The position numbers and the translations under genes are program-made. Positions 251 to 59,665 of a stretch of DNA of 64,000 nucleotides are shown here, one piece after another; within the stretch, counting starts at the first letter, position 1, and each line of letters opens with the position of its first letter. Source of the DNA: Selaginella moellendorffii (lineage: Eukaryota; Plantae; Lycopodiophyta); NCBI RefSeq assembly GCF_000143415.4, contig NW_003314273.1, positions 2,542,719 through 2,606,718 on the forward strand, read 5' to 3'. Below the pieces are notes generated by a model. That model did no database searches. It was not told the DNA's origin and worked only from the letters and a program-made list of their open reading frames with translations.

Positions 251-1567
251 CTTATCAAATTCAAAGTAGAGTTTAAACTGTTTATAATACTGTTTTGATA
301 TGGATACATATATTTTTCGAGCCATTGGATTGAAACAGCATAGTTTAGAATATAGCCATCAATCGGCATTATGGAATAGACAGGACTGCCATAGTGGATC
401 ACATTCTAGTTTGGGCTTGCATTGCTTCACCAGCCACTGCACAATAGAAACTACCCCTGCAAAATCAGTGATCCACTCTGAATTGAAAGGAGATGGAAAA
501 CATATATCTTAGATGTACCACCACCGCTAACACTGAATTTACCAACAGGAATCAACGTCCATCAATGACTTGTGATATGCATTACATATTTGCTCTAATA
601 TATTAATTATAACATTTTGTACTTAGTGAAGGATATTAGTATTAGCCACAACCACACCATCAACATCCACTATAATATAGTTTGATGGAATACAAAATAA
701 TTTAATATTAAAAACAAAGTACCATATGCAAAGTTGTCTAAATTTTTTAATTAATTATTTTACACATAAATATTAAATATAATAATGCAATGTTGCATTA
801 ATATAAAAGATTAACTAATGTTAAATATAATTAAATATTTTCGGTCACTTAGTAATTAAATCACTTCAACATTTTGGATAAGTTTATTTTAAGTTTTCCA
901 ATATTGTAAATGTAGTTACAAAATTAATTATGTCAAAAGTAAAGATGTTTATAATATTGCAACCTGAAAGTGTAAATCTTGACCTTTTTCTATGTAAAAA
1001 AGTCTTTGCAACCATATCCACTGTAGTATTTGAATATATAGATTCTTCATAAGTTGTGAATAAATCTTTGCTCAAAATCAATCAAGCTAACTTTTATGTG
1101 TGGAAACAGTTCATACAAACCAAGTATAATATCATTGCTATGTCTTCACTGAAGTATTGGGCCAAAAGTTTAAACATAAGGGTAATAAAAGTCCAAGAAT
1201 CAAGCATTATATCTTTTTGTTGCATTCGTATGTAATTTATGGGGTTATAGGCCTACTTATCCAAAAAAAATTATTTCTTTTTAATGTATTCTTTTACATT
1301 ATAACCTAATCTAAGTACATTCTAACCGTTAGGTCATAAAATATGCTAAAATATACCTAGAAGTGTTTCAACTGTACATTTAGAATATACCTGAATATTC
1401 TAGCATACTATTTATAACCCTGCCAGTGATCAGAATTCTTCTCATCCCTTCATCGTTTTTTCTTTCCTCAGTGCCGATCAGGGTAGGTGAGTGAGTGAGA
1501 GACTTAGACAAGATCTTAGTAGCATCACATCAAGAAGAAAGAGGAAGAAGAAGAAGAAGAAGAAGAC

Positions 1568-1680
1568 ATGGCTTCTCCAAGGCGATGCTCCATCCTCTTT
1601 AAATGAAGGCGTTTGCTGCCAGAGATCGATCTACTCACTCACACTGGAGGAGCTCCAGAATTCAATGCAGGACGAGTTCA
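1568..1680 (+). pseudogene. Group-A bZIP (ABI5/AREB-like) N-terminal fragment in leader of F-box copy 1
   Basis: Translates CQRSIYSLTLEELQNSMQDEF, matching the conserved C1 region RQxSIYSLTLDE..GSMNMDEF; no bZIP domain follows. Confidence 0.75.
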
Positions 1681-1729
1681 CTCCTTATGGTTACCTTTTA
1701 AGAATAGGTTAAGATCACTAGGGTTGCAA

Positions 1730-3238
1730 ATGAATCAAGAGATTGAGGAGGAAGTGTTGCAGCAGCTGCCGCTGTGCGATGTCTGGCGGATGAGAGCAGT
1801 GTGCAAACAGTGGCGGGAATTGATCGACTCCCCAGGGTTTGGCAAGCATTCCAGCAGCTGTTCCGGAAGAAATGCACAATACAGCACCCCTCACTCTTAC
1901 ATGGTTGCCCCTTTGCCACGCTCACTCCTTGCTTCCTCCGTGGCACGCTTAGTCACGCCCAGCTCTGCACCCTAAATGTTTAACGTTAAACTTTAATTAG
2001 TAGATGCTGTTAACGGATATGTTAAGGACTATAATTTTATAATTAGCCAGTGAATGAACGGCTATAATTTATAAGTATATAACCTACGATTGGTTTAGGT
2101 TTTTCCTCATTGTGTTTTATGTTTGTGCTCCTTATATTTTCTTTCTTATTTTATTCATTCTCTTTAGTATTGGAATATTCTTTTAGGTTTTGTATTACTG
2201 TTGGTCTTCTTCCACAAGAGAGAGAAAGGAAGCTACATTTAATATTCTATGCAGTCATATTAAGCTATACAATCAAGATAATGCTGTTATAGTAGAATAA
2301 ATAATATATTTGATTTTGTACTTTTAAATACTTAAAAATAGTTGAAAATAATATACAGTAAGTGCATGTAAGCAATGAGGTAGCATGCAAATCCAAATAA
2401 GCAAACAGGGCCCACCCTAAATAAGGGGGGGTGCTGTATTATGCATTCTACCCCAACTGGATAGAGATGGAAGTGTGCCCATAGGGGGGGTTTCTTATAG
2501 GAAGTGCTGGTGGATTGCTCTGCTTTGTGAAAGGGAACCAGGTCCTAGTAGGCAATCCACTCACTGGATGCTTTAGAGTGTTCAGGGCTAAAAGGCTGAT
2601 TTCATCCTCTTACATGGGCATTAGTCAAGACTTCAAGGAATACACAGTCTGCTTTGTAAGAAGTGGTTCTTGTGAAGAAAAAAAAGTTGAGATCAGAGGT
2701 AAGGCGAGAAGTGTCTACACAATGTTTACAACAGCTCATGTATACAACTCGAAACTTGGATGTTGGAGGGCTGCTAGCACACCATTGGGATGGTGTCAGT
2801 TGGAGAATGGTGGGCAACACTTTGTATTTGCTTTGTGGTCACTACAAGAAGTTGAATGATCCAGAGTATGTTGGTCTGTTCACTTTGGATTTGGAAGGGT
2901 TGAGGTTTGAATTAAAGCAGACTTGGCCATGGGATGAGCGGCTACACAGGAATCATGGTGTATTTGTTTCCTGCCATGGTCGGACAGGTTGCACTCAATT
3001 CAAAAACAGCATGCAGCTATGGTATATGCAAGGAGAAACAGGTGGTGGTGTTGAAGGTGAAAATCTGGCTAAAGGTGTTAGTAAAGAATGCAATGCTATT
3101 TGTTTGAATGGAGCTGTTTTATTTGTGGAGGAGAAGTCTTTGAATTTATCTACTACAGATGCAATTGCTTTCCCATTTCAGATAAATTCCGATCTAGCAA
3201 ATTTGGTAAAATTTACACCTTCACTTTTATTACCATAA
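1730..3238 (+). pseudogene. F-box protein pseudogene (copy 1)
   Basis: F-box motif EEVLQQLPLCDVWRMRAVCKQW. Relative to intact copy 4 it has a TIR element at 1865-2453, CAG>TAG at ~2482, and frameshifting deletions. Confidence 0.88.
1865..2453. mobile_element. Non-autonomous TIR element (MULE/MITE-like), ~590 bp
   Basis: Left end GGAAGAAATGCACAATACAGCACCCC versus reverse complement of right end GGTAGAATGCATAATACAGCACCCC; AT-rich non-coding interior; absent from the other F-box copies. Confidence 0.75.
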
Positions 3239-3756
3239 CTTGTGTTGTGTTTCTTTTTATAATATAAATTACTTAGTCTTGTCTATCTAAGCTAGATATT
3301 TTCTTTTATTGGGCAATTTCACGAGCGCTGGGCCAAGCGCCTGATACGAATGCATGAGGCATGTGCATCTCTCTCTTTGTTTCTCTCACTCCTTCTAGGG
3401 TTTCCTCCCTAGTGCTCTTGATGCATGCTCTGGAGCTCCGTGCTGCTTGTGATCAATAGCTCATTCATGTGATCTGTTTATCCTCCTCCTTTCTTCTCTT
3501 TCTCCCCATCTTTTTCTGCAAAAGTTGGAGACTTGATCAAGAGAGAAGCATGCACCTGGAAATGGTTATATCACTATATAAAATATAAAAAATTGGAGGA
3601 ATATAATCATGTTGTGAGTGCTAGGAATATGGAAAGGGAATACAGAAAATGTGCATATCAATTAGCTCAAAAACCATAGCTTATATACAGGAGTGAGTGG
3701 TCCGGATTGAAATCAATCCGACGGGAGCGGGTGTTGCGGGGACCTCGGGTGCCCCG

Positions 3757-12788: not shown

Positions 12789-13549
12789 TATAATTATATA
12801 CTTTAATCTTGACAACTACCCTGACCCAAACTAATCTTTAATAATAAGGTGGCAGGCCTACATAAGCATTGAGGGATAAGTTCCCAAGATCCAGATTACA
12901 TTTGATTCTCAATCTGAAAGAGATCATTCATTGTATTCTGCAATCCCATGATGGAGTGTTTTCGTCTTGAGGGCCTTGAGAGTGGTCAAGCCATACAATA
13001 TTTATAGTAAGGATCTAAAGAACTCCACACCAAATTTGAAAAGTTTTTATTTCTCAGCTTTCTAAACTCGTCACCCTGCCATTTGTTGAATTCTCTAAGC
13101 CTCACACGCAGTACCACACAGCCCATGCAATCTCTCAAGCATGGCACCACCGTCACTTTGGCCCTTGAATCCACGTATCTTAGAGATTGGGCTATTAATC
13201 TGTGGAAGAAATCACCGCCAAAGAAATTTTCATCAGAGCCCACTTCGGTTAAGGTTCGGAGACCGCTCTCACTGACCAGAATGCATCTTCTAAGGTTTCC
13301 TCTTAGCTCTTGTGCACTCCTGATTTGTGAGCTTGGATCCTCCCTCCTTTCTTCTCTTTCTCCCCTTTTTTCCTTCTCATCCCTTCTTCACAGTTTAAAA
13401 ATCTCATGCAGAGTTTTTTTTCTTCGTTTTTTCTTTCCTCAGTGCCGATCAGGGTAGTCCATTGGTGAGTGAGTGAGAGAGCTAGACAGGATCCAATCTT
13501 TCTTAGTAGCATCACATCAAAAAGAAAGAGGAAGAAGAAGAAGAAGAAG

Positions 13550-13680
13550 ATGTGGCTTCTTCGAAGACGCCCCTCCTCTAAATGGAGGCGTGGGCTGCCA
13601 GGGATCGATCTACTCGCTCACCCTGGAAGAGCTCTAGACTTCAATGCTGGACCAGGGAAAAATCGGCAGCATGAACATGG
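13550..13680 (+). pseudogene. Group-A bZIP (ABI5/AREB-like) N-terminal fragment in leader of F-box copy 2
   Basis: GVGCQGSIYSLTLEEL*TSMLDQGKIGSMNM; the only copy that retains GK.GSMNM. Confidence 0.8.
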
Positions 13681-13725
13681 CACTCACTTCCTTTTAAGAA
13701 TAGGTTAAGATCATTAGGGCTGCAA

Positions 13726-14997
13726 ATGAATCAAGAGATTGAGGAGGTGTTGCTTGTGACTTTGCTCCTACTACATTGTAATTAGTGTTGCCAAGACTTG
13801 ATCAATGAAAGTGCATAGGTAATTACAAGAATTAATAGATACAACTATGCAGCTATGAGCCACAAAAGCACTGTAGAGAAAACATATAACGATAAAGAAG
13901 ACGTATAAGCGTTACCGTTAATGCACTTTGTCACCAATTCCCAGGATTTTGGCAGCAACTTGAGACTTTAGTGCATGCTCTTGGTGTGGCTTCCTGCGCG
14001 ATGTCTGGCGGATGAGAGCAGTGTGCAAACGGTGGCAGGAATTGATCGACTCCCCAGGGTTTGGCATGCGGCACACACAGGCAAGCATTCCAGCAGCTGT
14101 TCCTTATGTTCTTGCAGGCACGTTGTGCGGAAGGATGTTCAGGGGCAACCCATTTAACAACAGCAACGCCTTCAACTGGATAGAGATGGTGCCCACAGGG
14201 GGGTCTCTTATAGGAAGTGCTGGTGGATTGCTCTGCTTTTTGAAAGGGAACCAGGTCCTAGTAGGCAATCCAGTCACTGGATGCTTTAGAGCGTTGCCAG
14301 ATCTCAGGGCTAAAGGGCTGATTTCATCCTCTTACATGGGCATCAGTCAAGACTTCAAGGAATACACAGTCTGCTTTGTAAAAAGTCGTTCTTGTGAAGA
14401 AAAAAAGTTGAGATCAGAGGTACGGTGAGAAGTGACTACACAATGTTTACAACAGCTCATGTATACAACTCGAGACTGGGATGCTGGAGGGCTGCTAGCA
14501 CACCATTGGGATGGTGTCAGTTGGAGAATATGGGGGAAGTGGTGGGCAACGCTACTTTGTATTTGCTTTGTGGTCACTACAAGAATTTGAATGATCCAGA
14601 GTATGTCGGTCTGTTCACTTTGGATTTGGAAGGGTTGAGGTTTGAGTTAAAGCAGACTTGGCCATGGGATGAGCGGCTACACAGGAATTATGGTGTATTT
14701 GTTTCCTGCCATGGTCGGACAGGTGTGTTGTGCTGCACGCAATTCAAAAACAGCATGCAGCTATGGTATATGCAAGGAGAAACAGGTGGTGATGTTGGAG
14801 GTGAAAATCTGGCTAAAGGGGTTGGTAAAGTATCCAATGCTATATGTTTGAATGGAGCTGTTTTATTTGTGGAGGAGAAGTCTTTATCTACAACCATTTT
14901 GAATTTATCTACTACAGATGCAGTTGCATTCCCATTTCAGAAAAATTCCGCTCTAGCAAATTTCGTAGAATTTACACCTTCGCTTTTATTATCATAA
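13726..14997 (+). pseudogene. F-box protein pseudogene (copy 2)
   Basis: 240 bp insertion (13754-13993) inside the F-box motif and a -1 frameshift in the A-run at ~14400. Confidence 0.88.
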
Positions 14998-16199
14998 CTT
15001 GTATTGTGTTTCTTTTCATAATATGAAATTACTTAGTCTCGTCTATTACTTTTATTTTCCTCCTTGGGTAATTTCACGACAGCGCTGGGCCAAGCGCCCG
15101 ATACGAATGCGTGAGGTATGCGCAGCTCTCTCTTTGTTTCTCTCGCTGCTTCTAGGGTTTCCTCCCTAGTGCTCCTGATGCATGCTCTGGAGCTCTGTTC
15201 TGCTTGTGATCAATAGCTCATTCGTGTGATCTGTTTATCCTCCCTCCTTTCTTCTCTTTCTCCTTTTTTTCTGCAAAAGTTGGAGACTTGATCAAGAGAG
15301 AAGCATGCACCTGGAAATGGTTACATCAGTATACAAAATATAAGAAAATGGAGGAATAAAATCTTACAGTTTAGAAAATGTTTTTTCTTTTAATTGTGCT
15401 GTTGTTTTTTCTTCCAAATATATGTATTATTTCACTTTAAAAGGAAATAAAATATAACTCTTAGTCAACCGTTTTAGGTTTCAAAGAAATGTCTTAAAGT
15501 TTCACAACCAATCAATACTATAAATACAATCATGGTAGAAATACATTGTTCATTTTGATTATGTTGGAAAGTGCATGATTATATTTTAGAGTTTTGTTTG
15601 CTATTGACAATTACTTGCTGAAGAATGTTTGAATGTTTTATTGTGAAGAGAAAATTGGGAATGTTAAGTTTTCCAAGAGCAAAGAGTCAATAAAAATGAT
15701 GCAATCAAAGAGAATTAACCATAGAAGGGAACTATATTACTAAAGAATTTGTTATGCCAAACAGCAACATGGTTTCCTTTATTTTTTATAGTTTTTATGC
15801 AATTTATTTTTATGACTGGTTTATCTTTAATTGTATGAATGCTATAGCACCTAATAAGGCTAAGTGCTTGTTTAGATTGCATAGCATTGAATATTAATGT
15901 TAATATCTTAGCCATTGCACATCATGATAAATGGTGGGTAATGGTGTTGCCACTATGGCCTCTTACCCTCCAGGTAAGAACTCTGTACTCCATTGAGACT
16001 GTTCTAACGAAACTTTTTTAAAGCCCTCAGTTTTCAAAAAGCTAGAACAATTTTTATGCCCTCTAGACTGAGAAAGAAACCATGGAGAGCTCAATAATAT
16101 TATTTTCAGAAGGTTAATGACTTGGCTTTTAGGTTTACTGTTACAAACATCCTTTTAACTTAGAGGATAATATATAGTTTTATATATAGAAAGTGAGAG

Positions 16200-22815: not shown

Positions 22816-23438
22816 GCTTTGTCTGCACCAAAGGGGCCAAAAGTTTAAACATAAGTGTAATAAAAGACTAAGAATCAAGCATTATCTTTTTTATTGCATC
22901 TGTACATAATCTAAGGCCTACTTGGCTTGACTTTCAAATATATTCATTTCGTTTAATGTAATCTTTTACATTATAACCTAACCTAAGTACATTTTAACCG
23001 TTAGATCATAAAATATGCTAGAATATACCTAAAAGTGTTTTTAAAGGTTTATAAATTACAAACATAAGATTAATCTAAATGTATATGTTAGAATATCCAG
23101 GCATATTCTAAATGTATTGGAATTTTTTGTAGAACCGAAGGTTGATGCCACTCTCACTAATCCTGTCCAGAATGCATCTTGTTTCCTCTTAGCTCTTGTG
23201 CATTCCTGATTTGTGAGCTTGGATCCTCCCTCCTTTCTTCTCTTTCTCCCCTTTTTTTCCTTCTCATCACAGTTTAAAAAACTCATGCAGAGTTGTTTTT
23301 CTTCTTTTTTTTTCCTCAGTGCCGATCAGGGTAATCTCATTGGTGAGTGAGTGAGAGAGCTAGACAGGATCCAATCTTTCTTAGTAACATCACATCAAGA
23401 AGAAAGAGGAAGAAGAAGAAGAAGAAGAAGAAGAAGAC

Positions 23439-23562
23439 ATGGCTTCTCCAAGGCGATGCTCCATCCTCCTTTAAATGAAAGCGTTTGCTGCCAGGGATCG
23501 ATCTACTCGGTCACACTGGAGGAGCTCCAGAATTCAATGCAGGACGAGTTCATGAAGAACAT
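23439..23562 (+). pseudogene. Group-A bZIP (ABI5/AREB-like) N-terminal fragment in leader of F-box copy 3
   Basis: CQGSIYSVTLEELQNSMQDEFMKNI. Confidence 0.8.
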
Positions 23563-23591
23563 CACTCCTTATGATTACCTTTTAAGAATAG

Positions 23592-24588
23592 GTGTTGCAG
23601 CAGCTGCCGCTGCGCGATGTCTGGCGGATGAGAGCAGTGTGCAAACGGTGGCGGGAATTGATCGACTCCCCAGGGTTTGGCGTGCGGCACGCACAGGCAA
23701 GCATTCCAGCAGCTGTTCCTTATGTTCTTGCAGGCACGTTGTGCGGAAGGATGTTCAGGGGCAACCCATTTAACAACAGCAACGCCTTCAACTGGATAGA
23801 GATGGTGCCCACAGGGGGGTCTCTTATAGGAAGTGCTGGTGGATTGCTCTGCTTTTTGAAAGGGAACCAGGTCCTAGTAGGCAATCCAGTCACTGCCAGA
23901 TCTCAGGGCTAAAGGGCTGATTTCATCCTCTTACATGGGCATCAGTCAAGACTTCAAGGAATACACAGTCTGCTTTGTAAAAAGTCGTTCTTGTGAAGAA
24001 AAAAAAGTTGAGATCAGAGGTACGGTGAGAAGTGACTACACAATGTTTACAACAGCTCATGTATACAACTCGAGACTGGGATGCTGGAGGGCTGCTAGCA
24101 CACCATTGGGATGGTGTCAGTGGGAGAATATGGGGGAAGTGGTGGGCAACGCTACTTTGTATTTGCTTTGTGGTCACTACAAGAATTTGAATGATCCAGA
24201 GTATGTCGGTCTGTTCACTTTGGATTTGGAAGGGTTGAGGTTTGAATTAAAGCAGACTTGGCCATGGGATGAGCGGCTACACAGGAATTATGGTGTATTT
24301 GTTTCCTGCCATGGTCGGACAGGTGTGTTGTGCTGCACTCAATTCAAAAACAGGTATATGCAAGGAGAAACAGGTGGTGATGGTGGAGGTGAAAATCTGG
24401 CTAAAGGTGTTGGTAAAGAATGCAATGCTATTTGTTTGAATGGAGCTGTTTTATTTGTGGAGGAGAAGTCTTTATCTACAGCCATTTTGAATTTATCTAC
24501 TACAGGGAAAGCAGTTGCTTTCCCATTTCAGATAAATTCCGATCTAGCAAATTTCGTAAAATTTACACCTTCGCTTTTATTACCATAA
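23592..24588 (+). pseudogene. F-box protein pseudogene (copy 3)
   Basis: A deletion removes the ATG and MNQEIEE; 17 bp frameshifting deletion at ~23895. Confidence 0.85.
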
Positions 24589-25789
24589 CTTGTGTTGTGT
24601 TTCTTTTCATAATATGAATTACTTAGTCTCGTCTATTACTTTTATTTTCCTACTTGGGCAATTTCACGAGCGCTGGGCCAAGCGCCCGACACGAATGTGT
24701 GAGGTATCTCTCTCTTTGTTTCTCTCGCTCCTTCTAGGGTTTCCTCCCTAGTGCTCCTGATGCATGCTCTGGAGCTCTGTGCTGCTTGTGATCAATAGCT
24801 CATCTCGTGTGATCTGTTTATCCTCCTCCTTTCTTCTCTTTCTCCCCCTTTTTTTCTGCAAAAGTTGGAGACTTGATCAAGAGAGAAGCACCTGATATCA
24901 GTATACAAAAAGAAAATGGAGGAATAAAATCATGTCAATAATATAGGATACTTACAGTTTAGAAAATGTTGTTTCTTTTAATTTATTGTTTTTTCTTCCA
25001 AATATATGTATTATTTCACTTTAAAAGGAAATAAAATATAACTCTTAGTCAACCTTTTTATGTTTCAAAGAAATGTCTTAAATTTTCACAACCAATCAAT
25101 ATTATAAATACAATCATGGTAAAAATACATTGTTCATTTTGATTATGTTGGAAAGTGCATGATTATACTTTAGAGTTTGTGTTTGCTAATGATGATTACT
25201 TTCTTAAGAATGTTTGAATGCTTTATTTTGAAGAGAAAATTGGGAATGTTAAGTTTTCCAAGAGCAAAGAGTCAATAAAAATGATGCAATCTAAGAGAAT
25301 TAACCATAGAAGGCAACTATATTACTGAAGAATTTGTTATGCCAAACAGCAACATGGTTTCCTTTATTTTTTTTTATAGTTTTTATGCAATTTCTTTTTT
25401 ATGACTGGTTTGTCTTTAATTCTATGAATGCTATAGCACCTAATAAGGATCTTGTTTAGATTGCATAGCATTGAATATTAATGTTAATATCTTAGCCATT
25501 GCACATTATGATAAATTATGGGTAATGGTGTTGCCACTATGGCCTCTTACCCTCTACTCTTTATTCCATTGAGATTGTTCTAATGAAATTCCTATGAAGT
25601 CTCCAGTTTTTAAATAGTTAGAACAATTTTTATGTCCTTCAGTGTGGAGAGCTCAATAATATTATTTTCAGAAGTTTAATGACTTAGCCTTCAGGTTTAC
25701 ATAGCTATGTTTGGCCAGACATCCTTTTAACTTAGAGGATAATATATAATTTTATATATAGAAAGTGGGAGTTGTAATTCTTCCTAGAG

Positions 25790-47516: not shown

Positions 47517-50500
47517 ATGCCTCGCCTTCATCATCTTCTTAGAACTATAAGAAATACCAATCATTTAGATAAGAATTTTGATACTAACAATTCTGATAAA
47601 CACCCTGAGCCGCTTCAAACTACTTCAGATCAAAATGAAATATATACATATCAAGCAATATCCACTACACACTCTCCATCTACACAAAACACACTAGCAA
47701 GTCACACTATTTATAAAGATTCATAAATTTCAACTTTTGAAATTGGTATTTTATCATCTATTTGTGTTTTTTGTAATGCATCACATTTTAAAAATGACAT
47801 TAAATTGAACTTTTGTAAGCTATATTCTTATATAGATCACATCTTTAAACTCATTGAGGAAAGCCTTTTAAGAACATTGCTATGTGTTATTAATATGGTC
47901 AAGTGATATTGCCACCTGTATTACCTTTGCCAAATACTTTACTTACGCTTTACAAACAAAACAAAAACTCAAATTTCAGAACTAATATTAAACACTATAA
48001 TAGTGCCCTTGCATTTGCATCAATGGGTGTTAACATTGACACTTTATGGGGTAACAGTCTTTATTGCTTTAGAATTCATGGGCAGATTTACCTTAGTGTC
48101 ATATTATCACATTTTTCTGGTGATCAAACTCCATCTTACAGGCAACTTTATATGCTAGATACACAAGAAGCCACAGATAAAGGAATCAAAACCCATTTAA
48201 TACAAGTTGTGAGTGAGATTTACTATTATATCTTGATACACTCCTTTATCATATTAATCCATATGTACATGCTTATAGAATGATGTATAAAATAAAATAA
48301 AAAGAACTTCATGAAGTAGCAGTTATAAGCTGTCCTTTACGTGGTGTTTATATGTTACTAAGGAATGAAGGAACAGATAATCAACATTATAATATACCAC
48401 AAACAAATGATGTTGCTGTTGTTTTTGTTAATGAGAATGAAGAACCCCTACGTGGATGTGAAATTTATATATATCCTATAGCAAATCATTTTCAAAAGAT
48501 TTCAACACTTGGTGTTAATTATGATCCTATGGTTTATCTTTTGATATTTCCTTTTGGTGATAAAGAATGGCATATAAATATTTTGAATACGTGACAATGT
48601 CAAACTATATTACTTCTATATTATATATAATGCTTATCTAAAAGAAACACACTACAATTAGGTTTAGACCAAATCTTACATGCTGGCAAGCTTACTCAAC
48701 AATACATTGTTGATGCATAATTCTTTTTGGTGGGTACGATAGTAATATAGGTTATTACCTATATTACTATTGTACCCACCAAAAACAATTATGAGTAGAA
48801 ATGTATACTAGTCTTATGGATTATGTTGCAAATCGTGTTTCAAATGAAAATATAAACCTCAGTAAAATTGTTATACTACCTTCAACTTTTGGTGGTGGAC
48901 CTAGAGCAATGCAAAAAAATTATCAAGATGCAATGACAATTGTTACTCATTATTCAAAACTAGATATTTCCATTACTTTCACTTGCAACCCTAAATGGCT
49001 AAAAATTAAAAAAAAATTACATCCAAATGAAAGTCCTAAAGACTGTCCTAATTTTGTCTCTAGAGTTTTCCATATTAAACTTAAAGAATTTTTGAAAGAC
49101 ACAATAAAAAGATATGTATTTGGGAAATGTATAACATATATATATATGTAATTGATTTTCAAAAAAGAGGTATCCCACATTGTTATTTTCTAGGAATTCT
49201 AGCCCATGAAAATAAAATTAAAGACCGTGATGCAATTAATCAATATATCATGGCTGGATTACTAAATCCTCGTGACAAATCTGAACTTTTTGAAATAGTT
49301 ATATGCATGAACCGTGTGGAAATTTTTTATCCTAATAGTCCTTGCATGGAAAATGGTTCTTGCTTGAAAGGTTTTTCAAAAAAATTTAATTATGAAACAA
49401 CATTTTCAATTAATAGATATCCAGATTATTATATACTAAAAAACAGACATACAGTTTTTAAATATGGTTATCATATGGATACCCATTGGGTTGTACCTTA
49501 TAACAAGTACCTCTGTAAAATATATAAGGCTTATATAAATATTGAAATATGTGCAACTATAAAAAGTATTAAATATCTATTTTAATATGTTTATAAAAGT
49601 TATGATTGTGCCACTATTAAAATCCATTCAACAACTCAACAACATGATAATAGCTTAAACTAGGATTAAATTTCAAGTTTTTTAAATACTTATTATGTTT
49701 TTGCTCCAGAAGCTATATGGAAACTTTTCCAATTTAAAATGCATGGTCATTCAACACTTATAATTTGTCTTCCTCTTGATCTAGAAAATATTCAAAATGT
49801 CTATTTCATCAAAGGTAATAAGCAAATTAAGCTTCAAAGAGCTACTCAAAATAATACTATGTTAACAAAATGGTTTGAATTAAATAGATATGATCCAAAT
49901 GCAAGGCAGTATACATATCTTGAAATTCCTTTACATTATACATATAATAAATGCACTCACTGTTAAATATTAGCGAAATATTATCTCACAAATGTATTTT
50001 GTTTCCCTATCTAATACTAAACGTTATTATTTACGTCTTATATTACTTTACAAAAGAGGCACTACTTCTTTTAATGATCTAAAAACAATTCATAGTATTT
50101 ATTTTGAAATATTTCAACTTACTGCATCTGCTATGGGACTTCTAGCAGATAATACAAAATGAGAAAAATGTTTAGAAGATGCTTGCTCTTTTAAAATGCC
50201 ACCACATTTAAAAAAATTTTTTTTTTTTATGTGACTTTTGTAATCCAAAAAATCCTTATTTCTTGTGGGAAAAATTCAAAAACTCTTTTTGTAAAGATTT
50301 TATGCTAATAGATCCATTACTTTGTTATGAGTGTGCTTTACATGATATAAATAGGAAATTCAATCTATATAGAAAATCTAATCAAGATTATGAATTGCCT
50401 TTATTTTATACAATTTTTGATGCAAATAATCATATTAATTTCACACAGTCCATTCATTCTGTAGAAAAAAAATTACTTCAGTTTAATGACTTAACACTGT

Positions 50501-51721
50501 TATACATACGTTTCAAGTTCTAAACAAAAATATAATTAGTATGTTTAGACAGATATTGCAAGCACTTTACTGCATAATGACTTTTAAACTTTTAAACTTC
50601 CTGTTCCAATAAATGAAATTTCTAGTTCTACTATTACAGCTAATAGTAAAGCAAGCCAGAAAATTAAAAATGCACATATGGTAATATGGGATGAAATTAG
50701 TATGGTTCATACACGTGCATTTTCTGCCATTAATTTAGCATTACAAGATATAAAAATAAATGAATTACCTTTTGGAGGAATTGTTATTATTACAAGTGGT
50801 GATTTAGACAAACATTACAAATTATTCCACATGGTCATCAAGCACAAATTATTTCAAATTCAGTAAAAATGAATACGTTATGAAAATTTTTTAGAACACT
50901 TCCACTAAAAAGGAATATGAGACTAATTGAAACAACTCTTTATAGACTGATTAGCTTCTTCAAATTGGAAATAGTAATAATTTACCCAATTTGCCTTCAG
51001 AATCTATTGTATTACCTTACATATGGTAATAATATCCTCTGTTTGTTGATTTTGTTTTCCCATCTCTACAGAATATTCCAGACCTCTACATTGCATTTAA
51101 TAGTCATACTTACCCCACATAATGATGATACTTCCTATTAATAATGCTATAGTCTCTTCCTTACCTAATGATATACATATTTATAAAAGTGTTGACTTTG
51201 TTGATACTAAACACCCAAAAGATTTTTCAGTTGAATTCTTAAATTCCATTACTCCTTCTAGTCTTCCACCACATAAACTCTTGCTTAAAGAAGGTATTAT
51301 CCTTATTCTATTAATGAATATATGTCTCGACTAGACTATGTAATGGTACATGCTTCATACTTAAACATGCATTACCAACAGTTCTAGACTGTGAAACTGT
51401 ATTAGGCTAATTCAAAGGTACATGAGCTTTCATCCCTTGAATCACACTCACACCTTCAAATATAGAAATTCCATTTAAAATGTCTAGAAGACAATTTCTA
51501 GTGCGTTTAGGGTATTGCCTTACAATCTCTAAATGTCAAGGCCAAACATTTGACCGAGTCAGAATACACTTGCCATATCCAATTTTCACCCATGGCCAAC
51601 TTTATGTTCACTAGCAGGATTAGGCATTAAAGTACAGAACACATCACTCCAAGGATAGTTATTCCCTTTGAGTCCTTCTACTTTCACTATCAACATAGTA
51701 TATAAGGAGGTTTTATATTAA
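47517..51721 (+). pseudogene. Helitron Rep/PIF1-helicase (RepHel), degenerate
   Basis: NIKHYNSALAFASMG; LPSTFGGGPRAM..YQDAM; ITFTCNPKW; DFQKRGIPHCY (decayed HUH); KYLF*YVYK; IWDEISM; LPPHKLLL; TISKCQGQT; FTHGQLYV; many stops and frameshifts. Confidence 0.95.
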
Positions 51722-51864
51722 ATCCTCCATGCATTGTTTGTAGCACTAAAGCAAATTCTTGATCAAGAATGCTGTCCTATTAGCAAGCTGCTTTATTTGT
51801 TCATTAGACTTACCATTCAAAACAGTATTTGTTAACAAGACAGCATATGCTAGGCAAGTGCTAG

Positions 51865-53795
51865 TCTATAGGGAATGCTGAACTTTCTGGGCCGCCAGAT
51901 CCAGCCAATCGCAGCCATCCGATAGGGGGTAATTGTAAAGTTGTTATTTCTTTAACCACGTCTTATTGAATAATCATGCTGATGTTTGCTCTCGGCCAAT
52001 GGGAGGTGGCCAAGCTGCATGGGGCAAGAGAAGAAGGCATTGCAACACATGGCACATGCAAATGTGTTGATTGTGACTGTGTTTGTCACATGTCAAGCGA
52101 ATTGGTATTGATTTTTGTTTTTCTAGGGTTTATGAAATGGTGAGACAGCCCTTGCCACTATTGCCAATTCGCAATCCAAATCTGAGGCACTGTGTCAACG
52201 CTGCTAGAATGAGCCATGTCCTGGTATTGTTTGTGTCAAGATCTTGCTTCTTGCTTTCTTATGTGAGTTTCATTTTCTTAGCATGCCTATTTAATGGGCT
52301 CTTGTATTGCTTGCTCTGCACAGCTAGGCTGTGTTGCTGCCTCTCTGCACACTACAGAACCAAGCCTTGGGGCTGCCTGGATCACGGAGCCAGGATTTTA
52401 TCTCCCATTGCTTCTGCTCACTCGTGCAAGAGTTCCAGCAGCAGAAGGCTGAGAGTGTCAAGTCCACTGTGGTTAATCACAGTCGGGGTAAGCACAAACT
52501 CTTTCGCTGTTCCACCTTCCTCCGGTTGTGGGCGAAGGTTGGGTGCTGGGGTAGAGAATTGTTGGAGCATAAGCCATAGACATTAAGTGACAAAAAATGT
52601 TGCCTACTGTGGTTCTGTGGCCCTCCTACATTGTTTATCAATTTTTTTTTTGGCTCCTACAAAACTCTTGCAAGGGATTGTGTGGGCACAAGAACAACAG
52701 CTCTTGGGGTTCCCATAGGGCATGGCTCCTAAGTCTGCTAGTGATTGTACAGGAGATGTTGCTTAGGTGGCAAAACCATTGGGGCAAGAATATTGTTTCC
52801 TAGCTTGGATACTATGATTAAAATTCATTTTGATTTAAACTTGCCTCAATCAGTTAGTATAATTAAGATGGCAGTTAATTTTCTTCTTTATGTATATGTT
52901 TAGTTGACAAATAGAGAAGCTGTGCTGATGTATTGATCAGGCAATTACAATATGCTCAAGATGTGGGTTAGCTTAGTCTTAATATAAACAAATTAAACAC
53001 CTTCATAAATCTTGCAAATACAGGATATCAGGTTTTAAATTTATAGTTTATATATTAATAACAGTTATTTTTTGTATTTCTTTTCTTAGTTTTACTTGGG
53101 TCTGGGTAGTAGATTAGTGTTCTTAAAATTTTATTGTTCTATATTCTAAAAAAGACACATGGCAAAGTAACTCTTTACTAAATCTATATTACTTAAAATT
53201 AAATTAATTTATTTTGATTCTATTTCTAGGTGTTTGAGTTTAAAGGTTACATACAATTTTTTAATTTTAGGTTATGTTTAGGTCTGAGTAATATATTAAT
53301 GTTCTTAAATCTTAGTTATATATTTATTCATATTCCAAGTAAACACATAATATTTAAATGATGCTTCCCTAAATTAATGATAATTAATCTTAGTAGTTCT
53401 TCTTTATATTTCTATGAGTTGGGGTAGTAATATATTAGTTTTCTTAACATTTTAGGATTCTAAATTTATTTATATCTCAAATAAAAAATACTTTACATGT
53501 AACATCTAATTAATAAATTTATTTTTTGTAATTCTTATTTTATTGTTTTTCTCTTGAAGTGTACTAAATATATTTATTCTTATATCTATAAAAAAACTCA
53601 TTCTTAAAATTTTTTATTTTAATTTGTTCTAGGTTGAGTATTAAATGTATTAAAATCTTAATAGTCTAAACATATCTGTATTCCTAAGTAATACTGCATA
53701 TATTATCTTTATCAATAATATTTACTTAGTAATTCTTATTTTACACTTTTACGAATATATCAATGTTCTAAATATATAGTCTATGCTAGTGTGTG

Positions 53796-53871
<76 letters not shown>
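51865..53871 (+). mobile_element. Non-autonomous Helitron, 5' portion, abutting the previous Helitron's 3' end
   Basis: Begins TCTATA directly after CTAG; first ~200 bp match the 5' ends at 22515 and 33581; ~52755-53800 is homologous to the minus-strand Helitron at 4777-5722. Confidence 0.65.
53790..53871. repeat. (GT)n(TA)n microsatellite
   Basis: Short GT run followed by a long TA run. Confidence 0.95.
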
Positions 53872-53874
<3 letters not shown>

Positions 53875-55139
53875 TAAAATTACTAAGTTTTGTACTCATC
53901 CAGCATCTGTTGAGCAATACTAGGAAGTTGTAGCCAAAGAGGGAAAAACTCTCCTTTTACCACAGCCCCTCCTATTCTACCCTTGCAGCCAAGGAAATTT
54001 TCTTTATCACAACTCCTTGACACCAAAGTTTCACTTGCTCCAGGTTTCTCTTCTTTACTGCAACTCCTTAGCCTCAAAGTTTGCAGAAGAAGAAGCAGTG
54101 CCGAGTGCTAGAGATGGAGGCCCAGGAGCTTGTGTTGGTCAAGCATAAAGGTTTATGGATGGATGATCGTCATATGCTGCACAAGAATTTTCCACTCATC
54201 TTTGTAGGATGCCTTAGCTAGGAATAGGTAAGATTTTTTTGTTCTTTCAGAGGAAATTCTATTTTCAAGTTTTGTGCTGGGTTTTAATACGAAAGAAGTT
54301 GGCTCTCACAATGGTAGCCATACTGCCATGGTTGGGCAAGTGCAATTGAAAGCATTCATTTTACCAGTAGTGGATGACTTTGAACTCTTGATTTTATGTA
54401 AGTGAATTTGCAGGACGTCGATATTTGGCAGACAGTTGGCCTTTGGAAGTACTCATCACCTGGACTTTTCCTTCTGGCCCAATATGCTCTCGGTGTTCTT
54501 GTTGCGACTGACTTATTTGTGGGAAATAGCATTTTAAAGAGTGCCAATGAAGTAGAAGGAATCGCTGAAGATGACACCTTTCGAGAGGATGGTATGCATT
54601 CTGTTATCGTGGACATTCCTATCTAACTTCACTTCTTTCTTTCAGAGCTAAGAAAGAAATGGATTCTGTTTATTGCGGTGATAAACAGAATCTAGGTTGG
54701 CTGTGAGATCGATGTTGTCCCACTCATAGTCACTGGAGTAGTTCCCAGTGAGAAATTCTTTATGTCTCTTTCTACAGCTACAATTCTCTTATACAAAACA
54801 CTGCAGGAAAATTAGAGCTATGCTTCAAGCTGTCATAAAACTCTTTGCCAATGTATTTGTCTTTTGGCTCAGAATTAGGTTTTTTCAATAACTTCACCTT
54901 GCCAACTCGCCAGCTTTTTGCTGGGCAATTTTTAGTGCATCTTCTAAGGTTTCCTCTTACTCCTGATTTGTGGATGCTCCCTCCTTTCTTCTCTTTCTCC
55001 CCTTTTTTCCTTCTCATCCCTTCGTTTTTTTTCCTCGGTGCCGATCAGGGTAGTCTCATTGGTGAGTGAGTGAGAGAGCTAGACAGGATCCAATCTTTCT
55101 TAGTAGCATCACATCAAGAAGAAAGAGGAAGAAGAAGAC

Positions 55140-55243
55140 ATGACTTCTCCAAGGCGATGCTCCATCCTCCTTTAAATGAAGGCGTTTGCTGCCAGGGATC
55201 GATCTACTCGCTCACACTGGAGGGACGAGTTCATGAAGAACAT
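55140..55243 (+). pseudogene. Group-A bZIP N-terminal fragment / uORF in leader of F-box copy 4
   Basis: CQGSIYSLTLE, frameshift, DEFMKNI; ATG at 55140 now opens an 11-codon uORF (MTSPRRCSILL*). Confidence 0.75.
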
Positions 55244-55294
55244 CACTCCTTATGATTACCTTTTAAAAATAGGTTAAGATCATTAGGGTTGCAA

Positions 55295-56347
55295 ATGAAT
55301 CAAGAAATTGAAGAGGAGGTGTTGCAGCAGCTGCCGCTGCGCGATGTCTGGCGGATGAGAGCAGTGTGCAAACGGTGGCGGGAATTGATCGACTCCCCAG
55401 GGTTTGGCGTGCGGCACGCACAGGCAAGCATTCCAGCAGCTGTTCCTTATGTTCTTGCAGGCACGTTGCGCGGAAGGATGTTCAGGGGCAACCCATTTAA
55501 CAACAGCAACGCCTTCAACTGGATAGAGATGGAAGTGTGCCCACAGGGGGGGTTTCTTATAGGAAGTGCTGGTGGATTGCTCTGCTTTTTGAAAGGGAAC
55601 CAGGTCCTAGTAGGCAATCCAGTCACTGGATGCTTTAGAGCGTTGCCAGATCTCAGGGCTAAAGGGCTGATTTCATCCTCTTACATGGGCATCAGTCAAG
55701 ACTTCAAGGAATACACAGTCTGCTTTGTAAAAAGTCGTTCTTGTGAAGAAAAAAAAGTTGAGATCAGAGGTAAGGTGAGAAGTGTCTACACAATGTTTAC
55801 AACAGCTCATGTATACAACTCGAGACTGGGATGCTGGAGGGCTGCTAGCACACCATTGGGATGGTGTCAGTTGGAGAATATGGGGGAAATGGTGGGCAAC
55901 GCTACTTTGTATTTGCTTTGTGGTCACTACAAGAATTTGAATGATCCAGAGTATGTCGGTCTGTTCACTTTGGATTTGGAAGGGATGAGGTTTGAATTAA
56001 AGCAGACTTGGCCATGGGATGAGCGGCTACACAGGAATCATGGTTTATTTGTTTCCTGCCATGGTCGGACAGGTGTGTTGTGCTGCACTCAATTCAAAAA
56101 CAGCATGCAGCTATGGTATATGCAAGGAGAAACAGGTGGTGATGTTGGAGGTGAAAATCTGGCTAAAGGTGTTGGTAAAGTATCCAATGCTATATGTTTG
56201 AATGGAGCTGTTTTATTTGTGGAGGAGAAGTCTTTATCTACAACCATTTTGAATTTATCTACTACAGATGCAGTTGCTTTCCCATTTCAGAAAAAATCCA
56301 ATCTAGCAAATTTTGTAGAATTTACACCTTCGCTTTTATTACCATAA
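55295..56347 (+). CDS. Intronless F-box protein, 350 aa (copy 4, intact)
   Basis: Open from ATG 55295; N-terminal F-box; LIGSAGGLLCF..VLVGNPVT and VYNSRLGCWR motifs typical of plant F-box/kelch-like or FBA-type C-termini; ends FTPSLLP. Confidence 0.9.
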   Translation: MNQEIEEEVLQQLPLRDVWRMRAVCKRWRELIDSPGFGVRHAQASIPAAVPYVLAGTLRGRMFRGNPFNNSNAFNWIEMEVCPQGGFLIGSAGGLLCFLKGNQVLVGNPVTGCFRALPDLRAKGLISSSYMGISQDFKEYTVCFVKSRSCEEKKVEIRGKVRSVYTMFTTAHVYNSRLGCWRAASTPLGWCQLENMGEMVGNATLYLLCGHYKNLNDPEYVGLFTLDLEGMRFELKQTWPWDERLHRNHGLFVSCHGRTGVLCCTQFKNSMQLWYMQGETGGDVGGENLAKGVGKVSNAICLNGAVLFVEEKSLSTTILNLSTTDAVAFPFQKKSNLANFVEFTPSLLLP

Positions 56348-56786
56348 TTTGTATTGTGTTTCTTTTTATAATATGAATTACTTAGTCTCGTCTATTACTT
56401 TTATTTTCCTCCTTGGGGAATTTCATGACAGCACTCTGCCAAGTGCCCAATACGAATGTATGAGATATGGGCATCTCTTTGTTTCTCTCACTCCTTCTAG
56501 GGTTTCCTCCCTAGTGCTCCTGATGCATGCTCTGGAGCTCCTTGTTGCTTGTGATCAATAGCTCATCTCGTGTGATCTGTTTATCCTCCCTCTTTTCTTC
56601 TCTTTCTCCCCCTTTTTTTCTGCAAAAGTTGGAGACTTGATCAAGAGAGAAGCATGCACTTACAAGTATATAAAATATTAAAAAAATGGAGGAATATAAT
56701 CATGCCAAAAATGTAGAATACTTACAGTTTAAAAAATATCATTTTTTTTAATTGTGTTGTTGTTTTTTCTTCCAAATATATATATT

Positions 56787-58410
56787 AGTTCAACTTCTTG
56801 TAGTCGATCCAACATTTTATGAACATCACAAAAGTGTTTCTCCCATGTCCCCTTTGAGTGGATCAAGACATCATAAATGAAGTCAGTAATCACCTTTGGC
56901 ATATTGTAAAGAATCTCATTTATCATCCGTTAAAAAATTGTTGAAGCATTATTCAAACAAACAGCATCACAATGAACTCGTACAAACTAAACAATGTATG
57001 AAAAACAGTTTTAAGAATATCTTTTTCAGCCATCGGTACTTGCTAGTACCCAGAAGCAAGATATAACTTGGTAAACCAATAACTTTTCCAAACGATCCAA
57101 AAAATCAATAATGTGAGGAAGAGGGTACACATCTGGGATCATCACTTCATTTAACAAATGATAGTCAATGTAAAAACGAATACTCCCATCAAGCTTTGTC
57201 ACAAGATGAGGTTCACATACCCAAGGATTTCGCGACTTTTGAATAACTCCCTTTTTTAACATTTTTTGATGTAAAATCTTGATCTCTTTGGGTGACTGAT
57301 GACAAATAGAAACCTCGATTAAACAAGCATCCCTAGTTGGAATCAGATGACATATGCCACTATTGGCCCCACACGATAGGTCAAAGTCAAAGAGTTTAAC
57401 ATACTCCTTCATGAGTTGATCAACCGCTGCAACACAAAGATTGTCAGAAGGATCAGAAAAGGGAAGAGTGGAACAAGATGGAAACATAATAGGAAGTAAT
57501 AGGGAGACAAAAGTAATGGAAGAAGAAGTAAAAGTAGAAGGACGAAAAAGTACAGAAGTGAAAGGAATAAATAAAATATAAAGAAGTATGAAATAAGGGG
57601 GAGAAGCCTCAAAATCACACTTGGCATGATTGTGCTACAACCAATCTATACCAAAGATAAGGTCAAAAACTTAACTCGGCACCACCCACAATGATTGCAA
57701 CCCAAGCTTCAAATCGCCTATATGCACAATTAGATCCACCTCATCTTGTGCACATACCTTTGCTATAAAGAATGAAAATTGGCTCTACTGCACAACACAA
57801 ATGTAGACGGCAATGTATGGCAATAGAACAAGCAATAAAAGATAAACTCGAATCTGTATCAATTAACATAGAGAAAATAATAGAAGACCTCTTGTTATAA
57901 AAACAAGTTTGGAAAGTAAACACTAGATGAATTGATATCAAATGAACCCTTTGATGATATTACCAAAAGAAAGATAGAGGGCTTATTGACTTAATCACGC
58001 AAGGTCCTTCTGCTACTCATGTGACTTCTTGTTTCCTAGAAGCATCTTGTTGTCCAAACCTTCCACTGCAGCAACACCAATGGGACATTATTGACACCAA
58101 GGTCTCTACCCAAGAAATGGAGAAAACGCTAATAATATTAATAGGTGTAACAATGATGTGTGGCAATTTTGGCCCACACGATAAGTCAAAGTTAAAGAGT
58201 TTGGCATACTCTTTCATGAGTTGATCAACCGCTACAACACAAAGATTGTCAAAGGGATCGGAAAGGGAAGAATGGAACAAGATGGAAATATAGAAAGACA
58301 TAATAGGAAGACAAAAGTAATAAAAGCAAAGGTAAAAGTAGAGGGATGAATAAGTACAGAAGTGAGAAGAATGGATGAAATATAAGAAAATATGAAATAA
58401 GGGGGAGAAG
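56787..58410 (-). mobile_element. Ty3/gypsy relic: protease and N-terminal RT (inverted segment)
   Basis: LIDTDSSLSFI; KGVIQKSRNPW..DGSIRFYIDYHLLN..DVYPLPHI; FIYDVLIHS..LDRLQE; internal duplication 57362-57633 / 58149-58410. Confidence 0.85.
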
Positions 58411-58954
58411 GGGAAGTCTAAACTCAAAAGCTTTGTGACCAAAGTAAAGGGGCATGGCCTTAGCGTAACGGGCTGATGTGTCGGTGGTACCTTGGGGTGT
58501 CGGTCATGGGATCGGACACGTGGAGCACTTGGATCAAGTGCAAAGGTTGAGTGGCGGGGATGCCATTCTCAGGGCTAACAAGCCCAAGTCTAAAATAGGA
58601 CTTATGGAAGTTGTGAGTGAGACTCCTCCAGGTGGTTGGAAGTGTGGTTAAGTGACTAAAATAGAATGGAAAATTTAGTCGCTTACAAAAAGCCTCAAAG
58701 TCACACTTAGCATGATTATACAAATATGTATATCAATTAGCCTAAAAACCTTAGTTGATTGGTATGAATTAAAACTAATCCGACGGTTACCAAAATCCCA
58801 CTATACTAATATTAGTATACAGCATCATAGCTGTACACTTGGACCTCACACTAGCATGATTGTATTTATAATATTGATTGGTTGTGAACTTCAAGACATT
58901 TCTTTAAAAACTAAAAAGGTTAGACTAAGAGTTATATTTTATTTTCTTTTAAAA

Positions 58955-59665
58955 ATTGGTTTAAAGTTGAAGTGGTTGAAGTGCGTGTTTGGGTCCAAGA
59001 ACACGACTTATCTTGGGTACCATATTTCTCATAAGGATTTACAAATTGATCTTGACAAACTTATGGCTGTTCTATAGTTCCCTACTCCAAAGTGTGTGAA
59101 TGATGTGTAACATTTCTTGGGCAAAGTGCAGTATATTAATTGTTTTGTGACTGCACCATTACAAGCATTGCTAAAGTCATCAACGTCATCTTTCATCTAG
59201 TCTACAGACTATGAGCAAGTGTTTATGTATCTCAAAGAGTAACGACTTTTCCATTTTGGCATATCCCAACTATACTCAACTTTTCATTTTGCACATGGAT
59301 GCTTTTAATATTAGTATTGGAGGTGTGTTGATGCAAAAGAGCCCAAATATGCTTTCAACACCATCTCATTACATATATAAATTATACATTACAACCAGTG
59401 GAGGCAAACTACTCCACGACAGAGAAGGAGTGTTTAGTAGTAGACTGGGGTTTTGAGAAACTTCATGTATATCTACATGGTTCTTGAATATTACTAAAAG
59501 GTGATCATCCTACCATTATTTCATTATTGAAGTAAAAAATCCTAGTTGGTCGTACTGTTTGGTGGGCTTTGAAGCTTCAGATATATAATTTTGATATTGT
59601 TCATTTCTTGAGAAGTTCTATAGCTGATGTTGATGCTCTTTCTCAAGCTCCTCTTCCTTCTTTGC
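58955..59665 (+). mobile_element. Ty3/gypsy relic: C-terminal RT and RNase H
   Basis: GLKLKWLKCVFG..YLGYHIS; LAYPNYTQLFILHMDA..IGGVLMQ; NYSTTEKECL; ADVDALS; cut by the LTR at 59666. Confidence 0.85.

What the first reader, a model, noticed from the sequence alone, without database searches (positions are those of the whole stretch)
54937..56347. Chimeric gene: F-box ORF placed behind the 5' end of an ABI5/AREB-type bZIP gene
Seen: all four F-box copies are preceded ~30-160 bp upstream by a pyrimidine-rich leader, a GAA repeat, an ATG and sequence encoding the group-A bZIP C1 motif. The copies together reconstruct QGSIYSLTLEELQ..GK.GSMNM.DEFMKNI. The R of RQxS is C in every copy, and the bZIP ATG is reduced to a short uORF in copy 4. 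Known: this motif is the SnRK2-phosphorylated region of ABI5/AREB/ABF factors. Inference: an intronless F-box ORF acquired the leader (and perhaps promoter) of an ABA-signalling factor, giving a new gene with possible ABA/drought-type expression, uORF control, or small-RNA cross-talk with the donor bZIP.
Basis: partly seen in the sequence, partly recalled or inferred. Interest (0 to 1): 0.78.

Follow-up and report, generated by a model that had tools for sequence, protein, structure and literature searches.

The report
Dead bZIP gene-start before F-box copies
In the spikemoss Selaginella moellendorffii, a local tandem duplication most likely placed the promoter-side DNA and first 55 codons of an ABI5-like gene in front of an F-box gene. 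That piece is now a decayed, untranslated relic copied with a mostly dead gene array, so this is an ordinary by-product of duplication, not a new regulated gene.

Summary
The window is Selaginella moellendorffii scaffold GL377577.1, 2542719-2606718. All four F-box copies carry, just upstream, DNA from the 5' end of a group-A bZIP gene.

I found the donor. It is the full-length "ABI5-like protein 5" gene (P0007, 336 aa), about 54 kb downstream on the same strand. A decayed F-box remnant lies directly upstream of it.

- **Extent of homology.** It runs from about -360/-400 to codon 55 of the bZIP. The rest of the bZIP is absent from every F-box copy.
- **Second bZIP piece.** A second piece of bZIP upstream DNA follows each F-box ORF, as it does at the donor locus.
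- **Likely origin.** This fits a tandem duplication with one breakpoint in bZIP exon 1 and the other 53 bp upstream of the F-box ATG, followed by amplification.

The functional reading is not supported.
- The bZIP frame was already broken in the common ancestor: a shared 1-nt deletion, a shared 21-nt deletion and R to C.
- The relic diverges about as fast as the near-neutral F-box ORF (dN/dS about 0.5-1.2).
- Eight of nine copies examined are frameshifted.
- RNA contigs from close paralogs stop matching the genome at an AG 9 nt before the F-box ATG. No contig covers the relic.

Expression of copy 4 itself remains untested.

The parts
54936..55139 (+). Copy 4: DNA derived from the upstream region and 5'UTR of the ABI5-like bZIP gene. 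It holds the pyrimidine tract, a 28-nt block identical to the donor (55061-55088) and the GAA repeat.
   Evidence: Alignment to L001 9170-9526; BLASTN 90-92% over the blocks; exact 28-mer.
55140..55241 (+). Copy 4: relic of bZIP exon 1 (codons 1 to about 55). It carries the shared 1-nt and 21-nt deletions, R to C, and a 20-nt deletion shared with the copy-4-type paralogs. bZIP homology ends at 55241 (...GACGAGTTCATGAAGAAC).
   Evidence: A sister relic (copy 3) matches P0007 residues 4-59, E 9e-13.
55140..55175 (+). Frameshift product of the bZIP ATG: an 11-codon ORF (MTSPRRCSILL*).
   Evidence: The 1-nt deletion after ATGGCTTC is shared by all copies.
55176..55277 (+). Second short ORF (33 codons, MKAFAARDRSTRSHWRDEFMKNITPYDYLLKIG*). 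Its length differs between copies.
55242..55294 (+). Junction stretch that is not bZIP-derived: 53 bp before the F-box ATG. An AG at 55285-55286 marks where RNA contigs begin to match the genome.
   Evidence: The JGI models P0002 and P0006 use the same acceptor.
55295..56347 (+). Copy 4 F-box ORF, 350 codons. It is the only intact copy of nine and forms part of the annotated model SELMODRAFT_410451.
56474..56621 (+). Second piece of bZIP upstream DNA (donor about -326 to -168) in the 3' flank of the F-box gene, colinear with the natural F-box-then-bZIP arrangement.
   Evidence: 80% over 163 bp.
1438..3517 (+). Copy 1: relic (bZIP ATG-equivalent at 1568), F-box ATG at 1730, ORF broken by an insertion of about 590 bp and several deletions, and a 3' bZIP-upstream piece at 3348-3517.
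13272..15272 (+). Copy 2: relic that keeps GKIGSMNM (41-nt exact match to the donor) with ATG changed to GTG, F-box ATG at 13726, ORF broken by a 228-bp insertion and frameshifts, and a 3' bZIP-upstream piece at 15105-15272.
23163..24857 (+). Copy 3: relic (ATG-equivalent at 23439), F-box ATG removed by a deletion, further frameshifts, and a 3' bZIP-upstream piece at 24709-24857.

Best explanation
The bZIP-like stretch is a non-coding relic of a duplication junction. In the ancestor, an intronless F-box gene lay head-to-tail just upstream of an ABI5-like (group-A) bZIP gene; a remnant of that pair still exists 54 kb downstream. A tandem duplication had one breakpoint about 53 bp upstream of the F-box ATG and the other after codon 55 of the bZIP. 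This placed about 360-400 bp of bZIP upstream DNA plus the first 165 bp of its coding exon in front of a second F-box copy. The bZIP frame was lost early, through a shared 1-nt deletion, a shared 21-nt deletion and CGC to TGC. The composite unit was then amplified by segmental and tandem duplication together with P450 genes on two scaffolds. Since then the relic and most F-box ORFs have decayed at about the neutral rate. In the transcripts that can be seen, the relic is not part of the mature mRNA. Shown: homology and its limits, donor identity, shared lesions, pseudogene status, and the contig pattern. Inferred: the order of events and the lack of function.
For: Donor and neighbourhood: the F-box paralog and a bZIP_1 gene lie 2.5 kb apart. 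The donor N-terminus reads MASSKTMLHPPPNGGVGPQRSGLGRQGSIYSLTLEELQNSMLDQGKIGSMNMDEFMKNVWTAEE. The F-box remnant at L001 8264-8845 sits directly upstream of the bZIP, and the same holds on GL377580.1. Limits of homology: the donor upstream region and its first 174 nt match all leaders, while the remaining 1026 nt match nothing else. The 3' flank of every F-box copy continues into bZIP upstream DNA. All copies share derived lesions. Copies carry independent partial deletions of the relic, and L003a and L004a lost most of it. Leader p-distance is 0.094 against 0.071 for the ORF. Pairwise dN/dS is 0.5-1.2. Eight of nine ORFs are broken. RNA contigs match from 55286 only, and none lies on 54763-55285. 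No terminal inverted repeats were found. The mechanism is documented elsewhere: tandem duplications with breakpoints in two genes of the same orientation make chimeric or truncated genes at the junction and leave intact genes at the edges (PMC7605254; PMC4069613).
Against: The RNA evidence comes from assembled contigs of four runs whose RNA nature is only guessed, though a GT..AG joint in all four supports it. Contigs cannot show absence, starts or rare isoforms. The F-box contigs are about 99% identical to copy 4 but come from none of the nine copies I hold, so copy 4 itself is untested. No ABA or dehydration sample was knowingly examined. Copy 4 keeps an intact ORF and has only 5 private substitutions, so a functional gene cannot be excluded. 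No F-box copy with its original, relic-free promoter was found, so the first duplication step is reconstructed, not observed. Today's unit boundaries (leader starting near donor -395, 3' piece ending at -168 followed by a common spacer) need further rearrangements that I did not resolve.
Confidence: 0.75

Rival explanations
1. One reading: a working chimeric gene. The captured bZIP promoter and 5'UTR drive the intact F-box copy 4, perhaps under ABA or drought, and the two relic uORFs or relic-derived small RNAs add regulation.
For: About 360-400 bp of the donor's upstream DNA, including a 28-nt block identical to the donor, is retained. The copy-4 ORF is intact. Two short ORFs lie between the old bZIP ATG and the F-box ATG. 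Exact matches of 30-41 nt to the donor CDS exist in copies 1-3. GenBank model EFJ28217.1 (P0001) starts inside the relic.
Against: No RNA contig lies on the relic in four runs, and F-box contigs join foreign 5' sequence at the AG at 55285-55286. The relic is no better conserved than the near-neutral ORF and is partly or wholly deleted in several copies. The leader and the donor's 627 bp upstream have no ACGTG core. The family shows dN/dS of 0.5-1.2 and 8 of 9 ORFs are broken. P0001 is an unsupported ab initio model.
Confidence: 0.1
2. A different order of events: the 5' part of the bZIP gene was duplicated first, as a truncated copy, and an F-box copy was later inserted or recombined behind it. 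The junction would then not be the breakpoint of one tandem duplication.
For: Present unit boundaries are not those of a simple one-step tandem duplicate. Three classes of upstream flank exist: copy-4 type, copy-2/3 type and copy-1 type. No relic-free F-box copy was found.
Against: The model needs two events where one suffices. It does not explain why the F-box 3' flank is bZIP upstream DNA in every copy, exactly as at the donor locus.
Confidence: 0.1
3. Transposon-mediated capture: a Helitron, Pack-MULE or retroelement picked up fragments of the bZIP and F-box genes and spread them.
For: The unit has many copies. Another foreign gene fragment (54402-54690) sits 250 bp upstream of the relic. 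There is a weak Helitron_like_N hit at 49127-49582 (E 0.028, below the cut-off). Retroelement ORFs lie nearby.
Against: No terminal inverted repeats flank the unit. Copies sit inside 10-12 kb segmental repeats that also carry P450 genes. The order of the pieces mirrors the natural F-box-then-bZIP neighbourhood. All copies lie in two arrays linked to the donor. The F-box remnant next to the donor is also intronless, so retroposition is not needed.
Confidence: 0.05

Closest known systems
Chimeric or truncated genes made at tandem-duplication breakpoints (Drosophila surveys, PMC4069613; Arabidopsis large tandem duplications, PMC7605254)
   Same: The two parent genes have the same orientation. One breakpoint lies inside the downstream gene's first exon and the other lies in front of the upstream gene. 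The junction puts the 5' end of one gene before the body of the other, and an intact gene stays at the edge (here).
   Different: Here the F-box-side breakpoint lies upstream of the start codon, so no fusion protein was ever encoded. The captured coding part is frameshifted. No transcript across the junction was seen. The product was amplified into an array of mostly dead copies.
Group-A bZIP factors (ABI5/AREB/ABF) with three N-terminal and one C-terminal conserved domains (PMC2978318)
   Same: The relic derives from the region that encodes the first N-terminal conserved domain (C1). The donor P0007 has C1, C2, C3 and the bZIP domain and is named ABI5-like by NCBI.
   Different: The relic lacks C2, C3 and the bZIP domain, has no open frame from its ATG, and carries C in place of the R of RQxS. 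It is a pseudo-exon, not a family member.
Gene-fragment capture by Helitrons or Pack-MULEs, and retrogene chimeras in plants (from my own knowledge)
   Same: Multi-copy mosaics of pieces of unrelated genes.
   Different: No element termini were found. The copies are linked to the donor. The order of the pieces reflects the native gene neighbourhood.

Membership tests
Group-A bZIP (ABI5/AREB/ABF): the relic in the window | Basic-leucine-zipper domain | tested here: not met
   The donor CDS beyond nt 174 (1026 nt, including the bZIP domain) matches nothing in the window or at any other F-box copy.
Group-A bZIP (ABI5/AREB/ABF): the relic in the window | N-terminal conserved domain C1 (RQxS...SLTLDE.Q...GSMNMDE.LKN.W) | tested here: inconclusive
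   The DNA clearly derives from C1. However, it is split over frames, R is changed to C, and it is out of frame with the ATG.
Group-A bZIP (ABI5/AREB/ABF): the relic in the window | Conserved domains C2 and C3, and an open reading frame from the start codon | tested here: not met
   Homology ends at codon 55. A stop follows 11 codons after the ATG in copies 1, 3 and 4, and copy 2 has no ATG.
Group-A bZIP (ABI5/AREB/ABF): the donor P0007 | Three N-terminal conserved domains plus a bZIP domain (PMC2978318) | tested here: met
   C1, C2 (RQSSVSIPRTLSQKTVDEVW) and C3 (GEMTLEDFLIRAGVV) align with named ABI5-like proteins. bZIP_1 scores E 2e-11. The nearest named relatives are ABI5-like proteins. The C-terminal motif is degenerate (LQRCRSFP against LRRTxSxP).
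F-box protein | N-terminal F-box domain | tested here: met
   PF00646, E 2.5e-8, residues 4-38 of the copy-4 ORF. A precomputed weak FBA_3 hit on the C-terminal part is recorded for P0001 and P0006.
Expressed chimeric (fusion) gene | A transcript that joins sequence of both parent genes | tested here: not met
   No contig lies on 54763-55285. F-box contigs match only from 55286. Caveat: these are contigs of close paralogs, so copy 4 itself remains open.
Transposon-captured gene fragment (Pack-MULE or Helitron) | Element termini (TIRs with target-site duplications, or Helitron ends) bounding the mosaic | tested here: not met
   No significant inverted repeats flank the unit. The copies are embedded in larger segmental duplicates. 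Helitron ends were not specifically modelled.

The most novel reading that the evidence does not exclude
Copy 4 (SELMODRAFT_410451), the one intact F-box ORF, is transcribed from the captured ABI5-like promoter under conditions not sampled here, such as ABA or dehydration. The two relic-derived uORFs would then gate its translation. Alternatively, the nine or more relics give rise to small RNAs that act on the donor ABI5-like mRNA.
Probability: 0.07. Interest if true: 0.5.

Novelty: new member of a known kind. Interest (0 to 1): 0.25.

Why it matters
The locus is a clean, datable example in a lycophyte of how tandem duplication shuffles promoters and first exons between neighbouring genes. The donor, the junction and the later decay are all still visible within one 110-kb region.

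It also corrects public annotation. EFJ28217.1 (P0001) starts translation inside the relic. EFJ29495.1 (P0006) borrows an unrelated inserted exon fragment. RNA contigs support neither.

It does not, on present evidence, add a new player to ABA signalling.

Tried and rejected
- **Earlier scan notes**: nothing on this place or on bZIP.
- **Exact look-up of the copy-4 ORF**: not on record, because the annotated model is the longer P0006.
- **Source of the 5' sequence of the expressed F-box contigs** (...GAACGATCGCTG), and of the neighbouring exons of the 8.7-kb transcript: not found in the window or in L001-L006, even allowing 4-5 errors.
- **Matching the expressed contig to a copy:** its seven variant sites and its 14-nt deletion fit none of the nine copies.
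- **Selection on copy 4:** only 2 synonymous and 3 non-synonymous private changes, which is uninformative.
- **Pfam on the inserted exon fragment:** no hit.
- **Direct repeats flanking the unit:** these first suggested an LTR-like element. They are instead the two bZIP-upstream pieces.
- **Leader versus donor coding-part distances:** inflated by misalignment around the copy-specific deletions, so I did not use them.
- **Steps not run:**
  - The large representative-protein search, because it was not needed once the donor was found.
  - A joined, spliced bZIP model. Only exon 1 was searched, by reference (L001:9527-10342), and the database protein P0007 was used for the whole protein.

Full report
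**What is there**

The window contains four copies of one composite unit. A 20-mer from the stretch that would encode GSIYSLT occurs at 1623, 13602, 23495 and 55196. None is expected by chance.

A four-way alignment shows the same parts in each copy, in this order:
- a pyrimidine-rich tract;
- a conserved block;
- a GAA repeat;
- an ATG-equivalent (1568, 13552 as GTG, 23439, 55140);
- the C1-like stretch;
- a short junction of 53 bp in copy 4;
- an F-box ORF (ATG at 1730, 13726, 55295; deleted in copy 3).

The F-box domain is confirmed by Pfam (PF00646, E 2.5e-8). Only copy 4 (55295-56347) has an intact 350-codon ORF.

**Organism and place**

The F-box protein matches only Selaginella moellendorffii proteins. 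Locus L005, fetched for the annotated model SELMODRAFT_410451 (P0006), is 100% identical to window 44114-64000. The window is therefore GL377577.1:2542719-2606718, plus strand.

**The donor**

A paralogous F-box copy, P0004, lies on the same scaffold. Only 2.5 kb downstream of it is a bZIP_1 gene (L001).

Its first exon begins MASSKTMLHPPPNGGVGPQRSGLGRQGSIYSLTLEELQNSMLDQGKIGSMNMDEFMKNVWTAEE.

The protein (P0007, 336 aa) is named ABI5-like protein 5. Its nearest named relatives across land plants are ABI5-like, AREB and ABF proteins. It aligns with them over C1, C2, C3 and the bZIP domain. These are the domains that define group A (PMC2978318).

The donor ATG is at GL377577.1 position 2651747. 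That is about 53.7 kb downstream of the copy-4 ATG, on the same strand. A second copy, with an identical exon-1 protein and 96% identical flanks, lies on GL377580.1.

**Extent of what was captured**

DNA alignments and BLASTN by parts show the limits.
- Homology runs from about -357 to the end of codon 55 (...GACGAGTTCATGAAGAAC, window 55241). In copies 2 and 3 it starts at about -395.
- The remaining 1026 nt of the bZIP gene match nothing at any F-box copy.
- A relic translation from copy 3 matches P0007 residues 4-59 with E 9e-13.

**Origin**

Three observations point to a local tandem duplication rather than import of a leader.
1. Directly upstream of the intact bZIP sits a decayed, 5'-truncated F-box remnant (L001 8264-8845; the same is seen in L006). 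The two genes are therefore natural head-to-tail neighbours.
2. The 3' flank of every F-box copy runs into bZIP upstream DNA, for example at 56474-56621, exactly as at the donor locus. This explains the direct repeats flanking each unit, which at first looked LTR-like.
3. No inverted terminal repeats bound the unit. The copies lie inside 10-12 kb segmental repeats that also carry P450 genes.

A duplication with breakpoints 53 bp before the F-box ATG and after bZIP codon 55 yields F-box, bZIP 5' part, F-box, intact bZIP. This is the documented way in which tandem duplications make chimeric or truncated genes at the junction and leave intact genes at the edges (PMC7605254; PMC4069613). The present unit boundaries need further rearrangements that I did not resolve.

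**State of the relic**

All nine copies I could examine descend from one ancestor. Four are in the window, one in L001 and four on GL377580.1. The seven copies that still hold the coding part of the relic share these lesions:
- a 1-nt deletion after ATGGCTTC, which turns the bZIP start into an 11-codon ORF (MASPRRCSILL*) and puts the C1 motif out of frame;
- a 21-nt deletion;
- CGC to TGC, so R becomes C.

The copies then lost different parts.
- Copies 1, 3 and 4 lack GKIGSMNM.
- Copy 2 lacks DEFMKNI.
- Copy 4 and its close paralogs lack 20 nt more.
- L003a keeps only about 15 nt.
- L004a lost the coding part altogether.

Substitution divergence in the leader (0.094 pooled) is not lower than in the ORF (0.071).

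**State of the F-box family**

- Eight of nine ORFs are frameshifted or interrupted.
- Pairwise dN/dS is 0.5-1.2, mostly 0.7-0.9.
- Copy 4 is close to the family consensus, with 5 private changes. Its intact frame fits either function or youth.

**Transcripts**

Twenty public runs hold about 35-40% of the sampled words of window 54700-56800. Contigs of four runs from four studies were laid on 53800-57000.

All four runs show a GT..AG joint (54590 to 54645), so they behave as RNA. No contig lies on 54763-55285, which covers the whole bZIP-derived leader.

In two runs, F-box contigs cover 55286-56366. They differ from copy 4 at 7-11 sites and by a frameshifting 14-nt deletion, and they fit none of the nine copies.

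Upstream of 55286 these contigs carry 240-257 nt unlike the window. I could not find that sequence in the window or in any fetched locus. Position 55285-55286 is an AG, 9 nt before the ATG, and two JGI models use it as an acceptor.

So, as far as contigs can show, the mature F-box mRNA excludes the relic. The limits are that contigs cannot show absence or starts, that copy 4 itself is untested, and that I had a single read-laying run.

**Other checks on the functional reading**

Neither the donor's 627 bp upstream nor the copy-4 leader contains an ACGTG core.

Exact matches of 30-41 nt between the relics of copies 1-3 and the donor CDS exist. Small-RNA cross-talk is therefore physically possible but has no evidence.

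**Annotation**

GenBank EFJ28217.1 (P0001) starts translation inside the relic (MALAARDRSTRSHWRDEFMKNITP...). EFJ29495.1 (P0006, copy 4) uses 54411-54590 as a coding exon spliced to 55287. The RNA contigs instead join that exon to 54645, and they belong to a different, 8.7-kb transcript.

**Verdict**

The mechanism is an ordinary tandem-duplication junction. The idea of a functional new gene is not supported.

Noticed in passing
window 54402-54690 (+): A 289-bp piece (exon 54413-54590, GT..AG intron, exon 54645-54683) is 100% identical to 2.1-8.7 kb RNA contigs in four runs. The neighbouring exons of those contigs are not in the window. The piece is missing at the same spot in the paralogous segments L001 and L002, where ACACC stands instead. 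It looks like a recent DNA-level insertion of a fragment of a large gene. The JGI model P0006 treats it as an F-box exon.
   Followed up: partly
window 13272-22400 versus 23163-32718, and 1-4776: Tandem segmental repeats of about 10-12 kb (81-95% identical) each carry an F-box unit and a cytochrome P450 gene or fragment. A similar array lies on GL377580.1 (L002-L004), with 510-aa P450 genes.
   Followed up: partly
L001 9527-10726 and L006 10001-11200: The ABI5-like donor gene is present on two scaffolds (GL377577.1 and GL377580.1). The exon-1 protein is identical and the surrounding DNA is 96% identical. On GL377580.1 the F-box array is inverted relative to the bZIP. The two scaffolds are either diverged haplotypes or a recent large duplication.
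   Followed up: partly
window 49127-49582 (+): This ORF has a weak Helitron_like_N match (E 0.028, below Pfam's cut-off). It may be a decayed Helitron remnant, 5 kb upstream of copy 4.
   Followed up: no
window 38193-44881 (-) and 57026-57487 (-): Retroelement-like ORFs show only faint RVT_1 and RT_RNaseH hits (E about 0.1). The one at 57026-57487 lies just after the end of the copy-4 unit (56796) and separates it from sequence that continues the repeat (59666-64000, similar to 6711-10557).
   Followed up: no
window 17301-17871: An assembly gap of 571 N lies inside the copy-2 repeat unit.
   Followed up: no
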